From positions 1 through 64,000 of the forward strand of contig JAPDFW010000099.1 of NCBI GenBank assembly GCA_028826165.1: a stretch of 64,000 nucleotides of DNA, in the 5' to 3' direction. Positions 14,222 to 25,000 of the stretch are shown here, in pieces; within the stretch, counting starts at the first letter, position 1; each line of letters begins with the position of its first letter. The stretch comes from Anaeramoeba ignava BMAN. Taxonomy: Eukaryota > Protista > Anaeramoebae. The position numbers and the translations under genes were made by a program. Under the pieces are notes generated by a model. The model did no database searches, had not been told where the DNA came from, and saw only the letters and a program-made list of their open reading frames with translations.

Positions 14222-17200
14222 ATGAATGAAAACGAATCAAATAAATCAAATTTAACATCTGACAGTAGCATTTACAGTTCTGAAAAAGAAAAAGGAAAAA
14301 GAAAAGAAATTGAAAAAGAAACTGATGATGAAAAACAAAAAGAAAGAAAAAAAGGATTTGAAACTGAAACTGAAACTGATGATGAAATTCAAAAAGAAAG
14401 AGAGAAAGAAAAAATTGCAAAAAAACAAAAAACTGAAGAACTTTTAAAGAAATATAAACCTCGTCCTGGTTTTCTTGGTAATTTAAATGAAAAACAAGAA
14501 GAAGTAAAAAATTTTTTATTTAAATTTAAAATTAAAAAAAAAATTGATCAATAAAAATTTAATTATAAAAAAACCAAACATAAACATAAAATAAACATAA
14601 ATATAAATATAAATATAAATAAAATATAAATATAAACATAAAATAAACATAAATATAAATATAAATATAAATATAAATATAAATATACTATAAATATAAA
14701 TATAACCAAATATAAATATAAATATAAAATATAAATATAAAATATAAATATAAATATAAAATATAAATATAAACATAAACATAAATATAAATATAAATAT
14801 AAAATATAAATATAAAATATAAATATAAAATATAAATATAAATATAAATATAAATATAAATATAAATATAAATATAAATATTAAAAAAAAAAATAAAATA
14901 AATCAAAATATAAATATAAATATAAATATTAAATATAAATATAAATATAAATATAAATATAAATATAAATATAAATATAAATATAAATATAAATATAAAT
15001 ATAAATATAAATATAAATATAAATATAAATATAAATATAAATATAAATATAAATATAAATCTAAATATAAATATAAATATAAATATAAATATAAATCTAA
15101 ATATAAATCTAAATATAAATCTAAATCTAAATCTAAATCTAAATCTAAATATAAATATAAATCTAAATATAAATATAAATTCAGGCATTAAAACAATTAA
15201 GAAAAAAAGTAGAAGATGTTTTACCTGTGTTTCAAGGAGATTATAAAGAACAAGAAACTGATTCATATTTATTACGTTATCTTCGAGGAGCTCAATTTGA
15301 TTTAGAAAAAGCAGAAATTTTCATTAGAAATGAAATTAAATGGAGAGCAGAAAAAAAACCAGAATTAATTACAAAAGAATCAGTTCTTGAAGAATTTAAA
15401 ACAATGAAATTTTATAATTCTGGAGTTGATAAAGAAGGTAGACCTGTTTTAATTGTTGAAGTAGCTAGACACAAAAAAAACAGAACTACAAGTGAAGAAA
15501 TGATTAATTTGATGATTTATGTTACTGAAAATGCAATTAGCAAGTAATTATTTGTTAAATTCAATATTCAATTCAATTTAATATTCAATTCTATATTTAA
15601 TATTCAATATTCAATATTCAATATTTAATTCAATATTCAATTTATTCAATATTTAATTCAATATTCTATATTTAATTCAATATTCAATTCAATATTCAAT
15701 ATTCAATAAATTTAATTCAATATTAAATTCAAAATCTAAATATTCAAAATTTAAACCCAATTCAAAATAAATACTTACCCAATATTCAATTTAAATTCAA
15801 ATCTAATTAAATATTCAATTAAAATATAAATATTCAAATTCAGGCATTAAAATATTTAAGAAAAAATAGAAGATGTTTTTACCTGTATTTCAAGGAGATT
15901 ATAAAGAATTCACAAGAAATTGATTCATATTTAATACGTTATTCGAGGAGCCTCAATTCAATATTTAGAAATTATTCAGAAATATTCAATAGAAATGAAA
16001 TTAAATGGACCCAATTCACCAGAAAAACCATTCAATATTCATTACAATTCAAGAATTAATTCAATATTCACCAATAATCAATATAAAAACAATGAAATTT
16101 TATATTTCAATATTCATGGAATTGATAATATTTAACCCAATATTCAATATTTGTTTTAATATTTATTCAATATTCTAGACACAATTTTCAATATTTAATT
16201 TAATATTCAATATTCAACCAATTATTGAAAATTCAATTCAATATTCAATTCAATTCAATTCAATATTTAAATTCAATATTCACCAATATTCAATATTCAA
16301 TATTCAATATTCAATATTCAATCCAATATTCAATATTTCAATTCAATATTCAATTCACGTTATTCATATTCACCCAATATTTAATTCAATTCATATTCAA
16401 TATTCAATATATTCATTCAATATTCAATATTCAATTCAATATTCAATCAATATTAATTCAATATTCATTCAATATTCAATATTCAATATTCAATATTCAT
16501 TCCAATATTCAATATTTAATTCAATTCAATTCAATATTCAATATTTCAATTCAATTCAATCCAATTCAATTCAATATTTAATTTAATTCAATTCAATTCA
16601 ATTCAATATTCAAATTTCTTTTTATAAATTTAATTCAAATTTCTTTTCTTAGAATGGAATATCCTATTGAAAATGTAACAATCATTTTTAATGTTAAAAA
16701 TATGGGATGGTCAAATTTTGATTATTCTGGTTCCAAAGAAGGTGCTTTCATTTTAATGAATTATTATGTTGAAAGACTTGGAAAATTATTTTTCATTAAT
16801 ATGGGTTGGATTTTTTCAACTTTGTATAAAATTGGGAAATCATGGATTGATCCAGAAACTCAAACAAAAAGTAAATTTTAAAAATTTTAAAAATTTTAAA
16901 AATTTTAAAAATTCTTAAAAATTTTAATTTTGCTTTTTAGTTTTTCTTGAAATCAAATTTTCTTGATACTTTTAAAAACAATATATTGATGAAGATTCTA
17001 TTCCTAAATCTCTTGGTGGAAAATTCCCAGATCCAAAACCAATTCCAAAAAGAAAAACAAAAACAACTTCAAGAAGAAAAAAAAGAAAAAGAAAAGAAAG
17101 AAAAAGAAAAGAAAGAAAAAGAAGAAAAAGTAAATACAAATCAGAAATCAAAAAGTTTTTCTTCAGATAAAGATAATAAACATGATTCTGATGATGATTC

Positions 17201-17240
17201 TGATGATTTCGAAAGTATGCAAAGTGATGATGAAAAATAA
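14222..17240 (+). CDS. Sec14/CRAL-TRIO lipid-binding protein, 4 exons
   Basis: Exons 14222-14503, 15185-15543, 16653-16870, 16941-17240. Motifs PGFLGNLNEKQEEALKQLR, DSYLLRYLRG, GVDKEGRPV, YYVERLGKLFFIN, WIDPETQ, YIDEDSIPKSLGG. Confidence 0.9.
14504..15184 (+). repeat. Intron filled with (ATATAA)n
   Basis: GT at 14504, CAG at 15182-15184, phase-0 join. Confidence 0.88.
15544..16652 (+). repeat. Intron filled with (AATATTC/AATTC)n and containing a degenerate exon copy
   Basis: GTAATT at 15544, AG at 16651-16652, phase-2 join giving K-M-E-Y-P. Confidence 0.85.
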
Positions 17241-17998: not shown

Positions 17999-20900
17999 TC
18001 AAATAGCAAAAGGAACAAAAACAGCAACAGTAAAAGAAAGAGGATTATTGTTTAAATCTTTAAGAGGAGAAATTCTAATTTTAGAAAAAGGACCAAGAGA
18101 AGTATGGTCAACAGAAATAGAAAAAGGTTTTTGAGATTCAATTTCCAACTGACTAATATGAAGGGGAACAATAACATTGATATCCCTATCATGTTTTTTT
18201 GCTTTTGAAATTCTTTTATCTTGTTCACTAGTGACCAAATAGCATTCCAAAGAGCGGTTAAAAGGGCAAGCAACATAACCAGATTCAGCAGAAGAGGGGA
18301 TATTTTTGACAATAACGGAATAGTAAGTACCTTGAGAAGTGGGGGATACTTTATAAGGAATTCCGTCAGGATTGATGTCGATCCATTTGAGAGATAAATC
18401 AAGATAAGTGATCCTATTCCGCGTGTCTTTGGGGGCAAGAACATGGACGTTTTGAATAAATGGAATTGTGATATCTGGAGCTGTTTCCACATTGGGACGC
18501 GGCGGTTTTTTCCAGCATTCGCATGTGTAAATGGTTATTTCTAAGTATTGATGAGCATTGCGGAAATATCCTTCTATTGTTTCAAAAAGAAGATCTCCTT
18601 GTGTCGGGTTTTCAAATGTGGATTTTGTTGTTTTTCCTTTTTCGGGAAGTGATAATCCAGGTAAAACCCCTTTTTCTTGGATGTTCATCGTCAGAATGTT
18701 TGATGTTTGTGCGCCGATATTCGGTTCTTCTGTTAGTGAAGGAATTAGTTTAAATGGTATTTGACTCCTTAAATTTACGTTTCTATGATATATTCCATCA
18801 TATACTGATAAATATCTAGAAACTCGACAATCTTCACCAATTGGAACTAAATAGAAAATGAATTGTATTTTTCAATTTCAAGAGTTTTATCAAGTTAAAC
18901 TTTTGCAGAATATTTTAAATATTATAAATTTTAATTTTAATAAATTTTAATTTTAATAAATATTAATTTTAATAATAAATTTAATTTTAAAAAGGATATT
19001 TGTTTTTTCCATAAATGCATTTTTAGATAATTTTAGACACGCATAAGTAATCAAAATTTGTTGAATTGTTCCATCATTTCCTGCAATACAAATTTTAAGT
19101 GTTGGACTTCATTGTTTTTTTTTTTGTTTTAAAAAAATCAATCATAAATATATTTAAATTCTTAAAAAATTAAAATTATTTCCTACTTAAAATTTGGAAT
19201 ATCTTTATATTGAGCTTCAATATTAGTAAGTTCTTTTTCAAATTCTTGAGTAAAAGGTAATTTAGGAAACATATGTGGCTTAGCAGTAAAATTTGAAATT
19301 GATCCTTGTGGAGGAATAATAAAATGATTAATAGAAAGTGGACCCAATCTATTAAATATTTTAGTTTGAATTTTAGAGTTTAAAGAAATTTTGTTTTAAA
19401 AATTGCTTTTTCTTTTTGTTTATAATTTTCCAACCTTGAATTGGTACTTCTTCAGTCCAATATTCATCTTTCATAATTGACTTTTTCAAATTTTTGTTGA
19501 TAAAGACACCCTGAATTCTTTTTAATTTTACTTAATAATGGCATAAATCTGTTATTTAAAATTTCTGTTCTTTTGTTCTGCTGATTTTTTTTTGTGTCAT
19601 TTTGACAACTTCATTAACAGTATTCATAACAACTGAGAAATAATAATCAATTTCACTTGAATCAATGCATTGCTCAAGAGAATGTAAATGTGGAATATTT
19701 CCAAATGAACTCAGTAAAGTGTCTAAAATTTTTCATTTTGAGTTTTTCATTTTAAATTTTTCATTTTAAATTTTTCATTTAATTTAATAAACTACGTTTT
19801 AATAAATGAATTTTCATGATCTCTTCTGGAATATCTTCTGAAATTCTTGTTCCAAGAACAGATGAAAATATTAATCCTTTTTGGGAATGAAACATCAATA
19901 AAAAGATAATGAAAAGTTAAACAATCCAAATTTTCTTTTGCTATTTCTGGATTTTTCTTCCACAAATCTTTTGCCTTTAAAAGTTGACCAGGAACTTTAA
20001 TTCTTCTTCAATTATTCCAAGTGTTTCCTAAAAATAAAAATAATTTTTCAATTTGATTTAAATTCAAAAATTCCTTTGTTTTTGCTTGGAATTTACTTGA
20101 GCGAATGTTCCATATGGATTGGGTGATAAAAAGTAAATTTCTTAATACTTTTCTGTATGATTTTAGCAGTTCTCGATTTGTTATTGGATACTGATATATC
20201 ATTTTGTTTTTGTTTTTGTTTTTGATAAATAATAATAAAATATTAAATTTTCTTTTTCTTTTGAAGTAAATTTTCTAAAATAAATCATACAATTGCAATT
20301 AATGATTGAAGAAGCCACAATGTTGCTAATAATTTTGAATTTTCTTTGTATACTTTAAGGAAAAAAAGTAAAGTATCATAAATTGTATCAACATATTTTC
20401 CCGAATATAATAACTTGCGAATATAAAGGTAAATCAATCCATAAGAATCTGTTTTAAATAATGCATTTTAATTTAATTTTTAAATAATAAATTTTAATTG
20501 AATTTTTAAATAATAAATTTTAATTTAAGTTTTAAATAATAAATTTTAATTTAAGTTTTAAATAATAAATTTTAATTGAATTTTTAAATAATAAATTTTA
20601 ATTGAAATATTCTACATTCTTCAATTGGAAGATTTGGTGGAATTTTAGGAAATCCAATAATTCCTGTATAATTTTGAACAGATACACAAAGATCAAGAAA
20701 ACGAATTAATGATTGTTTTGATTCTCGATAAGGTGGTGAAAGAAATTGAATTAGTTCAGTTTTAATATTTTTAGTTCCACATATTGGATCTGTAGTACAA
20801 AGTGTTTGTGTTTTTCCAGGTAATAAATCAATATTACATTTCCAGATCTTGTAAATATTATCCAAATGTTCAACATTTTCAAAGGAATAAAATAATGCAA

Positions 20901-21868
20901 GATAAAATGCAGTTAAGGCAATCCTATCACTTAAATTTTCTTTTTAATTTTCAAAATTTTAATTTTTAATTTTCAAATTTTAATTTTATAAATTGAATTT
21001 TAATTTAATTTTAATTTTATAAATGAATTTTAATTTAATTTTAATTTTATAATTTAAATTCTAATTTTAATTTTATAAATTTAAATTCTAATTTTAATTT
21101 TATAAATGAATTTTAATTTTATAAATTAATTTTATAAATGAATTTTAATTTAATAAATTGAATTTTAATTTTATAAATCAATTTTAATTTTATAATTTAA
21201 TTTTAATTTTATAAATTTAATTTTAATTTTAATTTAATTTTAATTTAATTTTAATTTAATTTTAATTTTATAAATGAATTTTAATTTTAATTTTATATTG
21301 AAATGCTTTTTACTCACCAAAAAAAGGTTGATTTTTAACAGATCCTTTCATAGTATAAGAACCCTTTAAACCAAGATAACGATTAAAAATTTCATTTAAA
21401 TCAATTTGATTAACCAAAAAAGATTGATTTGATTTTATTTGAGAATCAAAACTAATATTCTTTTTTTGAATTTTATCCTTTTTATCTTTCTTATCTTTTT
21501 TTTGAGGTTCAATTTCTTGAGAAACATCAACAACTTCATTAATAGAATCTTTAATTCCATTGATAACATGAACTAAAGTTTCTTTATATTTTAAATCTTC
21601 AAATTGTTTTTGAATCTGAAGATAATTTTTGAACTTTTGTAATTAAATCTGCCATTGAAGTCACTATATTTGTTTGTCCTGCTTCAATAAAATAATAATT
21701 TCATTAATAAAATCCCTAAAAATCCTCCTGCAAATTCTGGGTTTCCTAAATTTGTCCAAAATGTTAAAAATTTTGAAGTGTGATTTTTGTGTTGAATTGA
21801 TTGATAATTGATCGTTGATTATGTTTTTGTGTTGTTCATCAACTCCCTAAATATTTATCTAAAGACAT
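17999..21868 (-). CDS. PI3K class IB regulatory subunit p101/p84 (PIK3R5/6)-like protein; C-terminal half also PACS-like; ~9 exons
   Basis: Hand-spliced at GT-AG sites, with several homopolymer frameshifts corrected. Motifs LLLSPNPYGTFAQ|ETLGIIEEELKVPG, PTLKFCIAGNDG, FYLVPIGEDCRVSRYLSVYDGIYHRNV, DLLFETIEGYFRNAHQYLEITIY, IPFIQNVHV, PFSISVD..KIRISP..SFTVAVF are colinear with p101 motifs as I recall them. Confidence 0.65.
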
Positions 21869-22099
21869 TTCTTTTTGTTTTGATAAATGAAAAATGAAAA
21901 ATGGAAAAATTAAAATTAAAAATTAAAATTTAAAATTAAAATCAAAATTTAAAAATTAAAATCAAAATTCAAAATCAAAATTAAAATTAAAATCAAAATT
22001 AATTCATAAACAAGAACGTCATTTGTTATTGTTATTTTGATTATTTTTATTTTTATTTTTCATTTTTCATTTTTCATTTTTCATTTTTCATTTTTCATA

Positions 22100-25000
22100 A
22101 TGGATTTTTATACAAAATGTCCACGTTGTGGAAATGAAGTTTTAGATGAAGCAAATAATACAATTTATTGTCTTGAATGTGGTTTTGTATGTTTTTTATA
22201 TTTAAAATTAAAAAATTAAAAATTAAAATTAAAAAATTAAATTAAATTAAATTAAAAATAAGATTTTGGAAGAAAAGTACAATTGTTTCTGAATTAACTT
22301 TTATGTCAGTGATAAAGACGGCAAACAATCTGTTGATGGACAATTTGTTTCTAATTCAGGTATTTTTATTCTTAATTTTTATTTTTAATTTAAAATTTTT
22401 TTTAAATTTCTTTAATTTTTTTTAAAGGAATTGTTATTGGTGATAATGGAATTACAATTTTAAATGCCGCACGTGAATTTTGCTCTTCAAAATGGTAATA
22501 TAAATTTAAAAATTAAAAATTAAAATTAAAATTAAAATTAAAATCAAAATAAAAATTAAAATTAAATTTAAAATTAAAATTAAAATTTAAAATCAAAATT
22601 AAAATTAAAATTAAAATTAAAAATCAAAATTAAAAATTAAAATTAAAATTAAAATTAAAATTAAAATTAAAATTAAAATTAAAAATAAAAATTAAAATTA
22701 AAATTAAAATTAAAATTAAAATCAAATTTAAAATTAAAATTAAAATCAAAATTAAAATTAAAATTAAAATTAAAAATTAAAATTAAAATTAAAATTAAAA
22801 TTAAAATTAAAAATTAAAATTAAAATTAAAATTAAAAAGCAAGAAGAGAAATTATGAAACTTTTGCAGAAGATTTATCAATTAATGAAAGTTTTGCTGAA
22901 CAAGCTGCACAAATTTATGCACTTGCTTCTGAAAAAGGATTTATTCGAGGAAGAAAATCAATTCATGTTTGTGCAGCTTGTCTTTATGCAATTTGTAGAA
23001 AAAATGAAACAAGTCGTAAATTTTAAAATTAAAATAAAAATTAAATTTTAAAATTAAAATTAAAATTAAAATTAAAATTAAAATTAAAATTTAAATTAAA
23101 AATTAAAATAAAAATTAAAATTAAAATTAAAATTGAAATCAAAATTAAAATTAAAATCAAAATTAAAATTAAAATTAAAATTAAAATTAAAATTAAAATT
23201 AAAATTAAAATTAAAATTAAAATCAAAATTAAAATTAAAATTAAAATTAAAATTAAAATTAAAATTAAAATTAAAATTAAAATTAAAATTAAAAATTAAA
23301 ATTAAAATTAAAATTAAAATTAAAATTATAATTAAAAAAGATATGTTAATTGATTTCTCTGAAAAAGTGCAAACAAATGTTTATTATTTGGGTCATGTTT
23401 TTCTAAAACTTAGATCATTAATTCCATTAAGAGAAATTAAATTGGCAGATCCTTCATTATTTATTCAAAGATTTGCATCAAAATTAGATTTTGAAAAACT
23501 GTTCTTAGCAAAAATACAGCTCTTCAAAGTTGCAAGAATGAAAAGAGATTGGCTTCAAATTGGGAAGAAGACCAGCTGGAATTTGTGGAGCTGGTATTAT
23601 TATTCTTATTCTTATTCTTATTTAAAATTTTAATTCAATTTTTATTTAAAATTTTATTTTAAAATTTTTAATTTGTTTTTAGCTCTTTTTTATTGCTGCT
23701 AGAATTCATGGATTTAAAAAGAACAACTAATGAAATTACAAATGTTGTTGGTGTTGCTACAGATACAATTGCAAAAAGGTTAAAAATTAAAAATTAAAAT
23801 TAAAATTAAAATTTAAAAAAAAAAATAAAAATTTTAAAAAAATTAAAATTAAAATTAAAATTAAAATTAAAATTAAAAATTAAAATTTTACTAAAATTAA
23901 AATTCATTTTAAAAATTAAAATTAATTTAAAATTAAAATTAAAAATAAAAATTAAAATTAAAATTAAAAATTAAAATTAAAAATTAAAATTAAAATCAAA
24001 AATTAAAATTCATTTTGAAAATTAAAATTAAAATTCATTTTGAAAATTAAAATTAAAATTAAAATTCAAATTAAAATTTAAATTAAAATTAAAATCAAAA
24101 TTCATTTTGAAAATTAAAATTAAAATTAAAATTAATATTAAAATTCATTTTGAAAATTAAAATAGATTATCAGAATTTTGTCGTACAAATGCAGCAGATT
24201 TAACACTTGAAGAATTTAATAACATGGAATTCAAAACTTTTTTATCAATTCCGTCAAAAAAAAATACAGAACAATATCTTTGGAGTCAAACAAATTATGA
24301 TAAAAAAATAACCCAAAAAAAATCCAAAATTCAAAATGAACCAGTTGAAGAACCAAAATATTTACTTTTTGATAAAGAAATTCAACAAGAAATTGAAGAA
24401 ATCTTACATAATGAGAATTTTTAGATAATAAAGATTTTGAATTGATCCACATAAAGGATTTATTCTCAAAAACAACAGAAATTCAAAAGAAAATTGTTAA
24501 AGAATTTGTTAAATCTCAAGAAGTTGAATATAAAAATACTATTGAAAAAACAAAAACAGAAAAAGAAAAAAATATTATTAAAGAAATTGAAGATCAAACA
24601 ACTGAACAATTAATTATTAATTTTGGAGAAAATTTACCAAAAAATAGATTTAATAAAATGCATTATTTTGGAGATGAAGATGAAAATGAAGATGAAGATG
24701 AAAATGAAGATGAAGAAAATGAAAATGGAAATCTTGAAGATGAAATTGAAAATTTTATTGAAAATGAAAATGAAAATGAAAAATGAAAATGAAAATGAAA
24801 AGAAAATGAAAAAGAAAATCAAAATCAAAATGAAAATGAAAATGAAAATGAAAATGAAAATGAAAATCAAATTGAAAATCAAAATCAAAATCAAAATGAA
24901 ATTGAAAATCAAAATCAAAATCAAAATCAAATTGAAAATCAAATTGAAAATCAAATTGAAAAAAAAAAAAAGAAAAATGTAAAAAAAATTTTATGAAAAT

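What the first reader, a model, noticed from the sequence alone, without database searches (positions are those of the whole stretch)
17999..21868. Full-length p101/p84 (PI3K-gamma adaptor)-like gene in a protist, linking the p101 and PACS families
Seen: after hand splicing, the protein has a helical-looking N-terminal half with LLLSPNPYGTFAQETLGIIEEELKVPG (~20130-19989). It continues with PTLKFCIAGNDG (~19105-19072), FYLVPIG..VSRYLSVYDGIYHRNV (~18858-18778), DLLFETIEGYFRNAHQYLEITIYTCE, IPFIQNVHV and a terminal PFSISVD..IRISP..SFTVAVF. Recalled knowledge: vertebrate PIK3R5 has, in the same order, WPxPYC..ELKAPG, LRVVVFGSD, FFYVPV..YLGMLDPWYERNV, DMLLYYCRFAARPVLLQVY, IFIHSLELG and PFAVCLD..CEVSP..LPIMTF. 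The PACS C-terminal region shares the last five blocks (e.g. FLVIPLG.HPVARYLG..D..Y, FIPFVGVVKVG). Inference: p101/p84, the G-beta-gamma-sensing adaptors of class IB PI3K, are usually described as animal-restricted. A protist member would point to ancient G-protein-PI3K coupling and a shared p101/PACS ancestry. The ORF track shows only fragments, so automated annotation would probably miss it.
Basis: partly seen in the sequence, partly recalled or inferred. Interest (0 to 1): 0.85.

Follow-up and report, generated by a model that had tools for sequence, protein, structure and literature searches.

The report
Ancient protist p101/p84 PI3K-adaptor homolog
This anaerobic amoeba gene is a true full-length relative of the p101/p84 adaptors of PI3K-gamma, published as vertebrate inventions, and belongs to a family found across many protist lineages that also links these adaptors to PACS sorting proteins and to lipid kinases; whether it binds a PI3K is untested.

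Summary
Homology confirmed; G-beta-gamma sensing not supported for this gene. The window (Anaeramoeba ignava) holds a 9-exon gene, 21868-17999 (-). Its frameshifts are homopolymer-length differences from an intact second copy on contig C121, most likely assembly errors. That copy's public model (908 aa) passes the Pfam PI3K_1B_p101 cut-off, so annotation did not miss it. The last exon retrieves 68 relatives, named ones from Amoebozoa, CRuMs, an apusomonad, Palpitomonas and Rhodelphis. Their profile hits p101 and p84 at E~1e-24. An AlphaFold model of the A. flamelloides ortholog superposes on almost all of p84 (Z 22). The p110-binding turn and C-terminal proline are conserved, and the genome has a class I PI3K, G-beta, many G-alpha and separate PACS genes. 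But Anaeramoeba has a short loop where p101 carries its G-beta-gamma-binding helices. New here: a ~200-aa N-terminal helical extension; diacylglycerol-kinase motifs intact in 4 of 50 relatives but broken here; and a U12-type AT-AC last intron that the public model mis-splices. Philippon 2015 placed p101/p87 origin in vertebrates. The scan noted a p101-like gene and AT-AC introns on other DNA of this genome before. No RNA evidence was obtainable.

The parts
21318..21868 (-). Exon 1 (ATG at 21868): start of the protist-specific N-terminal helical extension; 5 homopolymer indels against the C121 copy
20616..20939 (-). Exon 2: rest of the N-terminal extension and start of the p101-like helical solenoid
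   Evidence: E 9e-8 to family profile
20291..20448 (-). Exon 3: p101-like helical solenoid
20097..20190 (-). Exon 4: helix and the conserved (W)PxPYG turn, the counterpart of p101's main p110-gamma contact; Trp is Ser here; one extra T near 20132
19796..20027 (-). Exon 5: helix ending E..PG, first strand of the DAG-kinase-like alpha/beta domain; 5 homopolymer indels
19435..19722 (-). Exon 6: helical insert (second part of the solenoid); 6 homopolymer indels. The intron before it sits at the same position and phase as a U12-like intron in Planoprotostelium
19187..19348 (-). Exon 7: linker
19000..19106 (-). Exon 8: degenerate DAG-kinase GGDG motif (GNDG) and following helix; longer than in the public model
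18865..18999 (-). U12-type AT-AC intron (135 nt, phase 1): 5' ATATCCTTT, 3' AC, branch-like CTTGA upstream; mis-spliced as GT-AG in the public model, which loses 19 residues
   Evidence: U6atac candidate
17999..18864 (-). Exon 9: rest of the alpha/beta domain and the beta-sandwich C-terminal domain shared with p101/p84, PACS and DAG kinases; short beta8-beta9 loop; invariant Asp of the DGE motif; C-terminal FxP

Best explanation
A catalytically dead, DAG/sphingosine-kinase-fold scaffold of the p101/p84 type, inherited vertically from an early eukaryote. Shown: the gene structure, family membership, the fold, the loss of kinase motifs, conservation of the p110-contact turn and C-terminal proline, and a class I PI3K in the same genome. 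Inferred: it binds the C2 domain and flanking linkers of that class I PI3K through the helical solenoid, and helps hold or orient the kinase on anionic membranes through the beta-sandwich and its basic loop. [quoted passage not shown] The extra ~200-aa N-terminal helical domain, lost in vertebrate p101/p84, probably binds a further unknown partner. The window copy is an allelic or duplicated copy whose frameshifts are uncorrected long-read errors.
For: Pfam PI3K_1B_p101 33.3 bits against cut-off 23 for the intact copy, and 29 of 70 family members hit it. Family profile versus PDB: p101 E 1e-24, p84 E 3e-24, no other hit below E 0.1. Single-sequence hit to p84 E 1.4e-4. AF2 model of the A. flamelloides ortholog, pLDDT 82, pTM 0.86: Foldseek p84 E 2.6e-20, TM 0.76 by target; Z 22.1 over 529 of 558 residues, model 204-959 on p84 3-756. 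The a5-turn-a6 region and the C-terminal Pro are the reported p110-gamma contacts (PMC8397274). In the family P315, P317, E332, G337 and P956 are 90-97% conserved, and that segment averages 0.44 against 0.32 for the rest of the solenoid. A class I-type PI3K (RBD, C2, helical, kinase; best hit p110-alpha E 2e-119) lies on C70. The tree groups Amoebozoa (SH-aLRT 98), CRuMs (98) and Anaeramoeba (100) as expected for vertical descent. One locus in two copies.
Against: No interaction was tested and a co-fold was not possible. The conserved turn could be structural. My placing of a5-a6 on the WPxPY turn rests on alignment and the papers' description, not on coordinates. The Trp of the turn is Ser or Leu in Anaeramoeba (it is also Leu in p84). 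The A. ignava PI3K is closer to p110-alpha than to p110-gamma, and the anionic C2 surface used by p101 is reported absent from other class I enzymes. Philippon 2015 dates class IB catalytic subunits to opisthokonts. The structure was modelled for the ortholog (29% identical), not for this gene. No RNA data.
Confidence: 0.5

Rival explanations
1. The ancestral family is a PI3K-independent membrane or trafficking scaffold, as its PACS paralog is thought to be. Vertebrates later recruited a truncated copy as the p110-gamma adaptor. The conserved turn then serves folding or another partner.
For: Homology with the PACS C-terminal region. A conserved ~200-aa N-terminal domain absent from p101/p84. 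The local PI3K is not gamma-like. The most invariant residues lie in the kinase-fold core.
Against: The segment matching p101's main p110 contact and the terminal Pro are among the best conserved features. The helical solenoid is shared with p101/p84 and not with PACS.
Confidence: 0.3
2. One reading: this protein is a G-beta-gamma-sensing adaptor that couples heterotrimeric G proteins to PI3K, as p101 does.
For: A. ignava has G-beta, dozens of G-alpha loci and a class I PI3K. Most other protist members do carry a ~40-residue insert with a KxF motif at the position of p101's G-beta-gamma-binding extension. A basic loop is kept.
Against: In all three Anaeramoeba proteins that loop is only about 18 residues. 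The extension is the main G-beta-gamma site and its absence explains p84's weak response (PMC10068899; PMC10187307). No G-gamma was found by Pfam (inconclusive).
Confidence: 0.12
3. The protein is still an active or nucleotide-binding lipid kinase of the DAGK/SphK/YegS family with a solenoid attached.
For: The fold matches DgkB and SphK1 at Z 18-19. GGDG, PxGxxN and DGE are all intact in 4 of 50 members, the DGE Asp is invariant in 69 of 69, and 6 members hit DAGK_cat.
Against: In A. ignava the motifs read GNDG, PIGEDC and DHT, and in A. flamelloides GGDL and DYQ. Most members have lost at least one motif. p101 lacks the catalytic residues.
Confidence: 0.04
4. The window copy itself is a decaying pseudogene duplicate and only the C121 copy is functional. 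This concerns the copy, not the family.
For: 17 exonic indels, several shifting the frame.
Against: All 17 are homopolymer-length changes. 5 of 6 substitutions are synonymous and none is nonsense. Neighbouring genes show the same patchy pattern across a 29-kb collinear block. The assembly is nanopore-based and polished with short reads.
Confidence: 0.1

Closest known systems
p84/p87 (PIK3R6), PDB 8AJ8 chain B
   Same: Best structural match: the whole domain order solenoid, alpha/beta domain with helical insert, beta-sandwich; 529 residues aligned, Z 22. PxPY turn without Trp, E..PG, terminal Pro. No long G-beta-gamma-binding extension.
   Different: 17% identity; an extra ~200-aa N-terminal helical domain; shorter disordered linkers; partner unknown.
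p101 (PIK3R5), PDB 7MEZ / 8SO9 chain B
   Same: Same architecture and motif order; profile E 1e-24; Pfam PI3K_1B_p101 cut-off passed.
   Different: The beta8-beta9 extension with KRL is reduced to a short loop in Anaeramoeba; the DQDE/RKIL segment is not matched; N-terminal extension present; no ~200-aa acidic linker.
PACS-1/PACS-2 C-terminal region (Pfam Pacs-1)
   Same: Shares the DAG-kinase-like alpha/beta and beta-sandwich module: 17 of 70 members hit Pacs-1; predicted-structure TM 0.55 over 325 residues; the genome's own PACS exons hit the family profile in collinear blocks.
   Different: PACS has an N-terminal C2-like FBR in place of the helical solenoid and is a separate gene in this genome (C75, C103).
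DAG kinase / sphingosine kinase / YegS family
   Same: Two-domain fold (Z 18-19) and relic GGDG, PxGxxN and DGE motifs, complete in a few relatives.
   Different: Solenoid added in front and a helical bundle inserted; motifs broken in Anaeramoeba.

Membership tests
p101/p84 (PIK3R5/6, PF10486) | Scores above the Pfam PI3K_1B_p101 gathering cut-off | tested here: met
   Intact copy P0069: 33.3 bits against 23, E 1.6e-8; isolated window exons do not score alone
p101/p84 (PIK3R5/6, PF10486) | Three-part architecture: helical solenoid, alpha/beta domain, beta-sandwich, collinear over the full length | tested here: met
   Ortholog model 204-959 aligns to p84 3-756 and p101 11-877; profile alignment
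p101/p84 (PIK3R5/6, PF10486) | p110-gamma contact elements: a5-turn-a6 and C-terminal proline | tested here: met
   PxPYG, E..PG and FxP present; Trp replaced by Ser. Sequence level only
p101/p84 (PIK3R5/6, PF10486) | Forms a heterodimer with a class I PI3K | not testable with these tools
   Candidate partner on C70; no multimer prediction available
p101 proper (G-beta-gamma sensor) | beta8-beta9 helical extension with KRL, plus the 816-830 segment | tested here: not met
   Loop about 18 residues in Anaeramoeba against a mode of about 40 in the family; sites defined
PACS family | C-terminal region homologous to Pfam Pacs-1 | tested here: inconclusive
   This protein does not hit Pacs-1 itself; homology holds at family and fold level
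PACS family | N-terminal C2-like furin-binding region | tested here: not met
   N-terminal 340 residues are all helical in the model; true PACS genes lie elsewhere
DAGK/SphK/YegS active kinases | Intact GGDG, PxGxxN and DGE motifs | tested here: not met
   GNDG, PIGEDC, DHT in A. ignava; all three intact in 4 of 50 relatives
U12-type intron | AT-AC ends with ATATCCTT 5' site and branch-like sequence near the 3' end, restoring the protein | tested here: met
   Best of 4 in-frame splice pairs, zero gap, score 39.5 against 8.6 for the annotated GT-AG; gapless match to the intron-free A. flamelloides sequence
U12-type intron | Minor spliceosome present and splicing shown in RNA | tested here: inconclusive
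   U6atac candidate 29.9 bits, under the cut-off of 33, with the GGAGAGA box intact; U11 weak at E 0.2; U12 not found; no reads

The most novel reading that the evidence does not exclude
The last eukaryotic common ancestor already had a p101-type adaptor bound to class I PI3K. It derived from a DAG-kinase-like enzyme, some living members of which may still bind ATP, and it was paralogous to PACS. The long-loop members in amoebozoans, dictyostelids included, would be the missing regulatory subunit linking G-beta-gamma to PI3K in amoeboid chemotaxis, with Anaeramoeba having lost that loop.
Probability: 0.25. Interest if true: 0.88.

Novelty: new variant of a known kind. Interest (0 to 1): 0.64.

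Why it matters
The one phylogenetic study of these adaptors that I found concluded that p101/p87 arose in vertebrates. It left open how class I PI3Ks are regulated elsewhere (PMC4617754). A p101-type family in Metamonada, Amoebozoa, CRuMs, apusomonads, Palpitomonas and Rhodelphis moves the origin to near the root of eukaryotes. It supplies a candidate regulatory subunit in dictyostelids, where PI3K chemotaxis genetics is routine. It also gives the PACS C-terminal region, described as lacking a defined function in a 2025 preprint (10.1101/2025.11.05.686565), a fold and ancestry: a dead lipid-kinase module shared with p101. The tempering points are that Pfam and GenBank already label such proteins, the p101-DAG-kinase fold link is published, and function is untested.

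Tried and rejected
Exon-wise Pfam, PDB and Atlas searches with window pieces gave nothing; the signal appears only through relatives. Word-index homolog searches returned few hits, and no vertebrate or D. discoideum sequence was retrieved by id, so no tree with p101 or PACS could be built and animal orthology rests on profile and fold. The N-terminal extension folded alone gave only generic helical matches, best Z 6.6. Window exons were searched apart by reference and full-length work used public protein records. Only 24-55-residue junction peptides were scored inside one script. Rejected: separate N- and C-terminal genes; PACS ortholog; missed annotation; contamination or gene transfer (the tree follows host groups). 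Literature searches found no report of protist p101 or of minor introns in Anaeramoeba; the library is incomplete. The hits labelled Schistocerca and Batrachochytrium sit among protists in the tree and were not used as evidence for animal or fungal presence.

Full report
Observation. The genome holds two copies with an identical last-exon protein: the window (C100) and C121. Window 1-29 kb is collinear with the end of C121. Cluster look-up names the organism Anaeramoeba ignava. It shows a 908-aa model on the 169-kb contig (C121) and a 357-aa model on another contig, by inference the window's. Both are already called 'phosphatidylinositol 3-kinase regulatory subunit'. Mapping the 908-aa model gives nine exons. 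The window copy differs in exons by 17 indels, all homopolymer-length changes, and six substitutions, five synonymous. Neighbouring genes show the same pattern, and the assembly is nanopore-based. I read the frameshifts as assembly errors in an allelic or duplicated segment.

Family. The last exon alone finds nothing in Pfam, the PDB or the Atlas. It does find 68 proteins among 1.8 billion representatives, the complete ones about 750-1270 aa. Named members come from A. flamelloides, Palpitomonas, Thecamonas, Soliformovum, Rhizamoeba, Planoprotostelium, three dictyostelids, Rigifila, Diphylleia and Rhodelphis. A quick ML tree (SH-aLRT only, midpoint root, many long branches) recovers Amoebozoa, CRuMs and Anaeramoeba as clades. 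Intron positions at reference residues 133, 293 and 393 are shared in the same phase with Planoprotostelium. This fits vertical inheritance from an early eukaryote.

Identity. The intact copy passes the Pfam PI3K_1B_p101 cut-off. Of 70 members, 29 hit that family, 17 hit Pacs-1 and 6 hit DAGK_cat, and no other family is hit. The family profile finds only p101 and p84 in the PDB, at E about 1e-24. An AlphaFold model of the A. flamelloides ortholog (pLDDT 82, pTM 0.86) matches p84 and p101 first and then sphingosine and DAG kinases. It aligns over 529 of 558 p84 residues at Z 22. In the Atlas the nearest shapes are PIK3R5, then PACS, then bacterial DAG kinases. Residues 1-200 form an extra helical domain with no specific match.

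PACS link. A. ignava has separate PACS genes on C75 and C103. Their exons hit the family profile in three collinear blocks, best E 2e-6. The shared part is the kinase-like module only, so the window gene is p101-type and PACS is a paralog. The kinase ancestry is visible in sequence: GGDG, PxGxxN and DGE are all intact in 4 of 50 members and the DGE aspartate is invariant, but Anaeramoeba has broken all three motifs. The fold link between p101 and DAG kinases is published (PMC8397274). I found no paper linking it to PACS.

Mechanism. p101 and p84 bind p110-gamma mainly through N-terminal helix loops and the C-terminal proline. The matching PxPYG turn, E..PG and FxP are among the best conserved positions in the family. 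The genome encodes a class I-type PI3K, G-beta and many G-alpha subunits; G-gamma was not detected. The G-beta-gamma site of p101 is a helical extension in the C-terminal domain that p84 lacks. By profile alignment most protist members have a ~40-residue insert there, but the three Anaeramoeba proteins have about 18 residues. The most likely role is therefore a p84-like adaptor and membrane scaffold for class I PI3K (0.5; binding inferred, not shown). A PI3K-independent scaffold (0.3), direct G-beta-gamma sensing (0.12) and active kinase (0.04) are the rivals.

Minor intron. The public model has a 19-residue gap between exons 8 and 9. An intron from 18999 (ATATCCTTT) to 18865 (AC) closes it exactly. 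It is the best of four in-frame splice pairs and makes the SNP at 18860 synonymous. A U6atac-like RNA with its GGAGAGA box lies on C71, scoring just under the Rfam cut-off. U11 was weak and U12 was not found. Other readers of this genome noted AT-AC introns in other genes (unchecked). I found no paper on minor introns in Anaeramoeba.

Novelty and limits. Philippon et al. 2015 (PMC4617754) placed the origin of p101/p87 in vertebrates, using BLAST at E 1e-30. I found no later paper on protist members, but databases already label them. This is a new variant of a known kind with a large range extension. No reads were available. No vertebrate sequence could be put in the tree, and the structure is of the ortholog. 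Interest 0.64.

Noticed in passing
G000:C71:58882-58994 (+), locus L004: U6atac-like snRNA (29.9 bits, cut-off 33) with a well conserved 5' half; suggests a minor spliceosome in a metamonad.
   Followed up: partly
L036 (Planoprotostelium ortholog), intron after residue 434; window intron 19795-19723: A U12-like GT-AG intron (GTATCTTT, branch TCCTTGAC) sits at the same position and phase as U2-type introns in A. ignava and Cavenderia: a possible U12-to-U2 conversion. A. flamelloides intron 1 also looks U12-like (L013, after residue 133).
   Followed up: partly
P0007 (Thecamonas AMSG_11887): The family member is fused to an N-terminal Ras-family GTPase domain; a real fusion would fit a Ras-linked role, but it may be a gene-model merge.
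   Followed up: no
P0003, P0010, P0036, P0056: Members with all three DAG-kinase motifs intact: candidates for an enzymatically active ancestor-like form of p101.
   Followed up: partly
G000:C70:~117600-122900 (+), locus L015: Class I-type PI3K (RBD, C2, helical, kinase; possible ubiquitin-like adaptor-binding exon upstream). It is the only RBD hit among about 11 loci with a PI3K helical domain.
   Followed up: partly
genome-wide: About 40 or more G-alpha loci (151 exon-level matches); one clear G-beta locus at C102:31756-33473; no G-gamma detected by Pfam.
   Followed up: partly
window 1-29364 versus G000:C121:134220-169207: Near-identical collinear block; PACS is likewise in two copies (C75, C103). 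Suggests uncollapsed haplotypes or segmental duplications in an assembly posited to be haploid.
   Followed up: partly
window 14222-17240 (+) and 22000-23630 (+): Flanking genes: a CRAL-TRIO (Sec14-like) lipid-binding protein and a TFIIB/BRF-like factor. No shared neighbours in the ortholog loci seen.
   Followed up: partly
P0027 and P0045: Members annotated as Schistocerca gregaria and Batrachochytrium salamandrivorans group with protists in the tree, probably contaminant contigs in those assemblies.
   Followed up: partly
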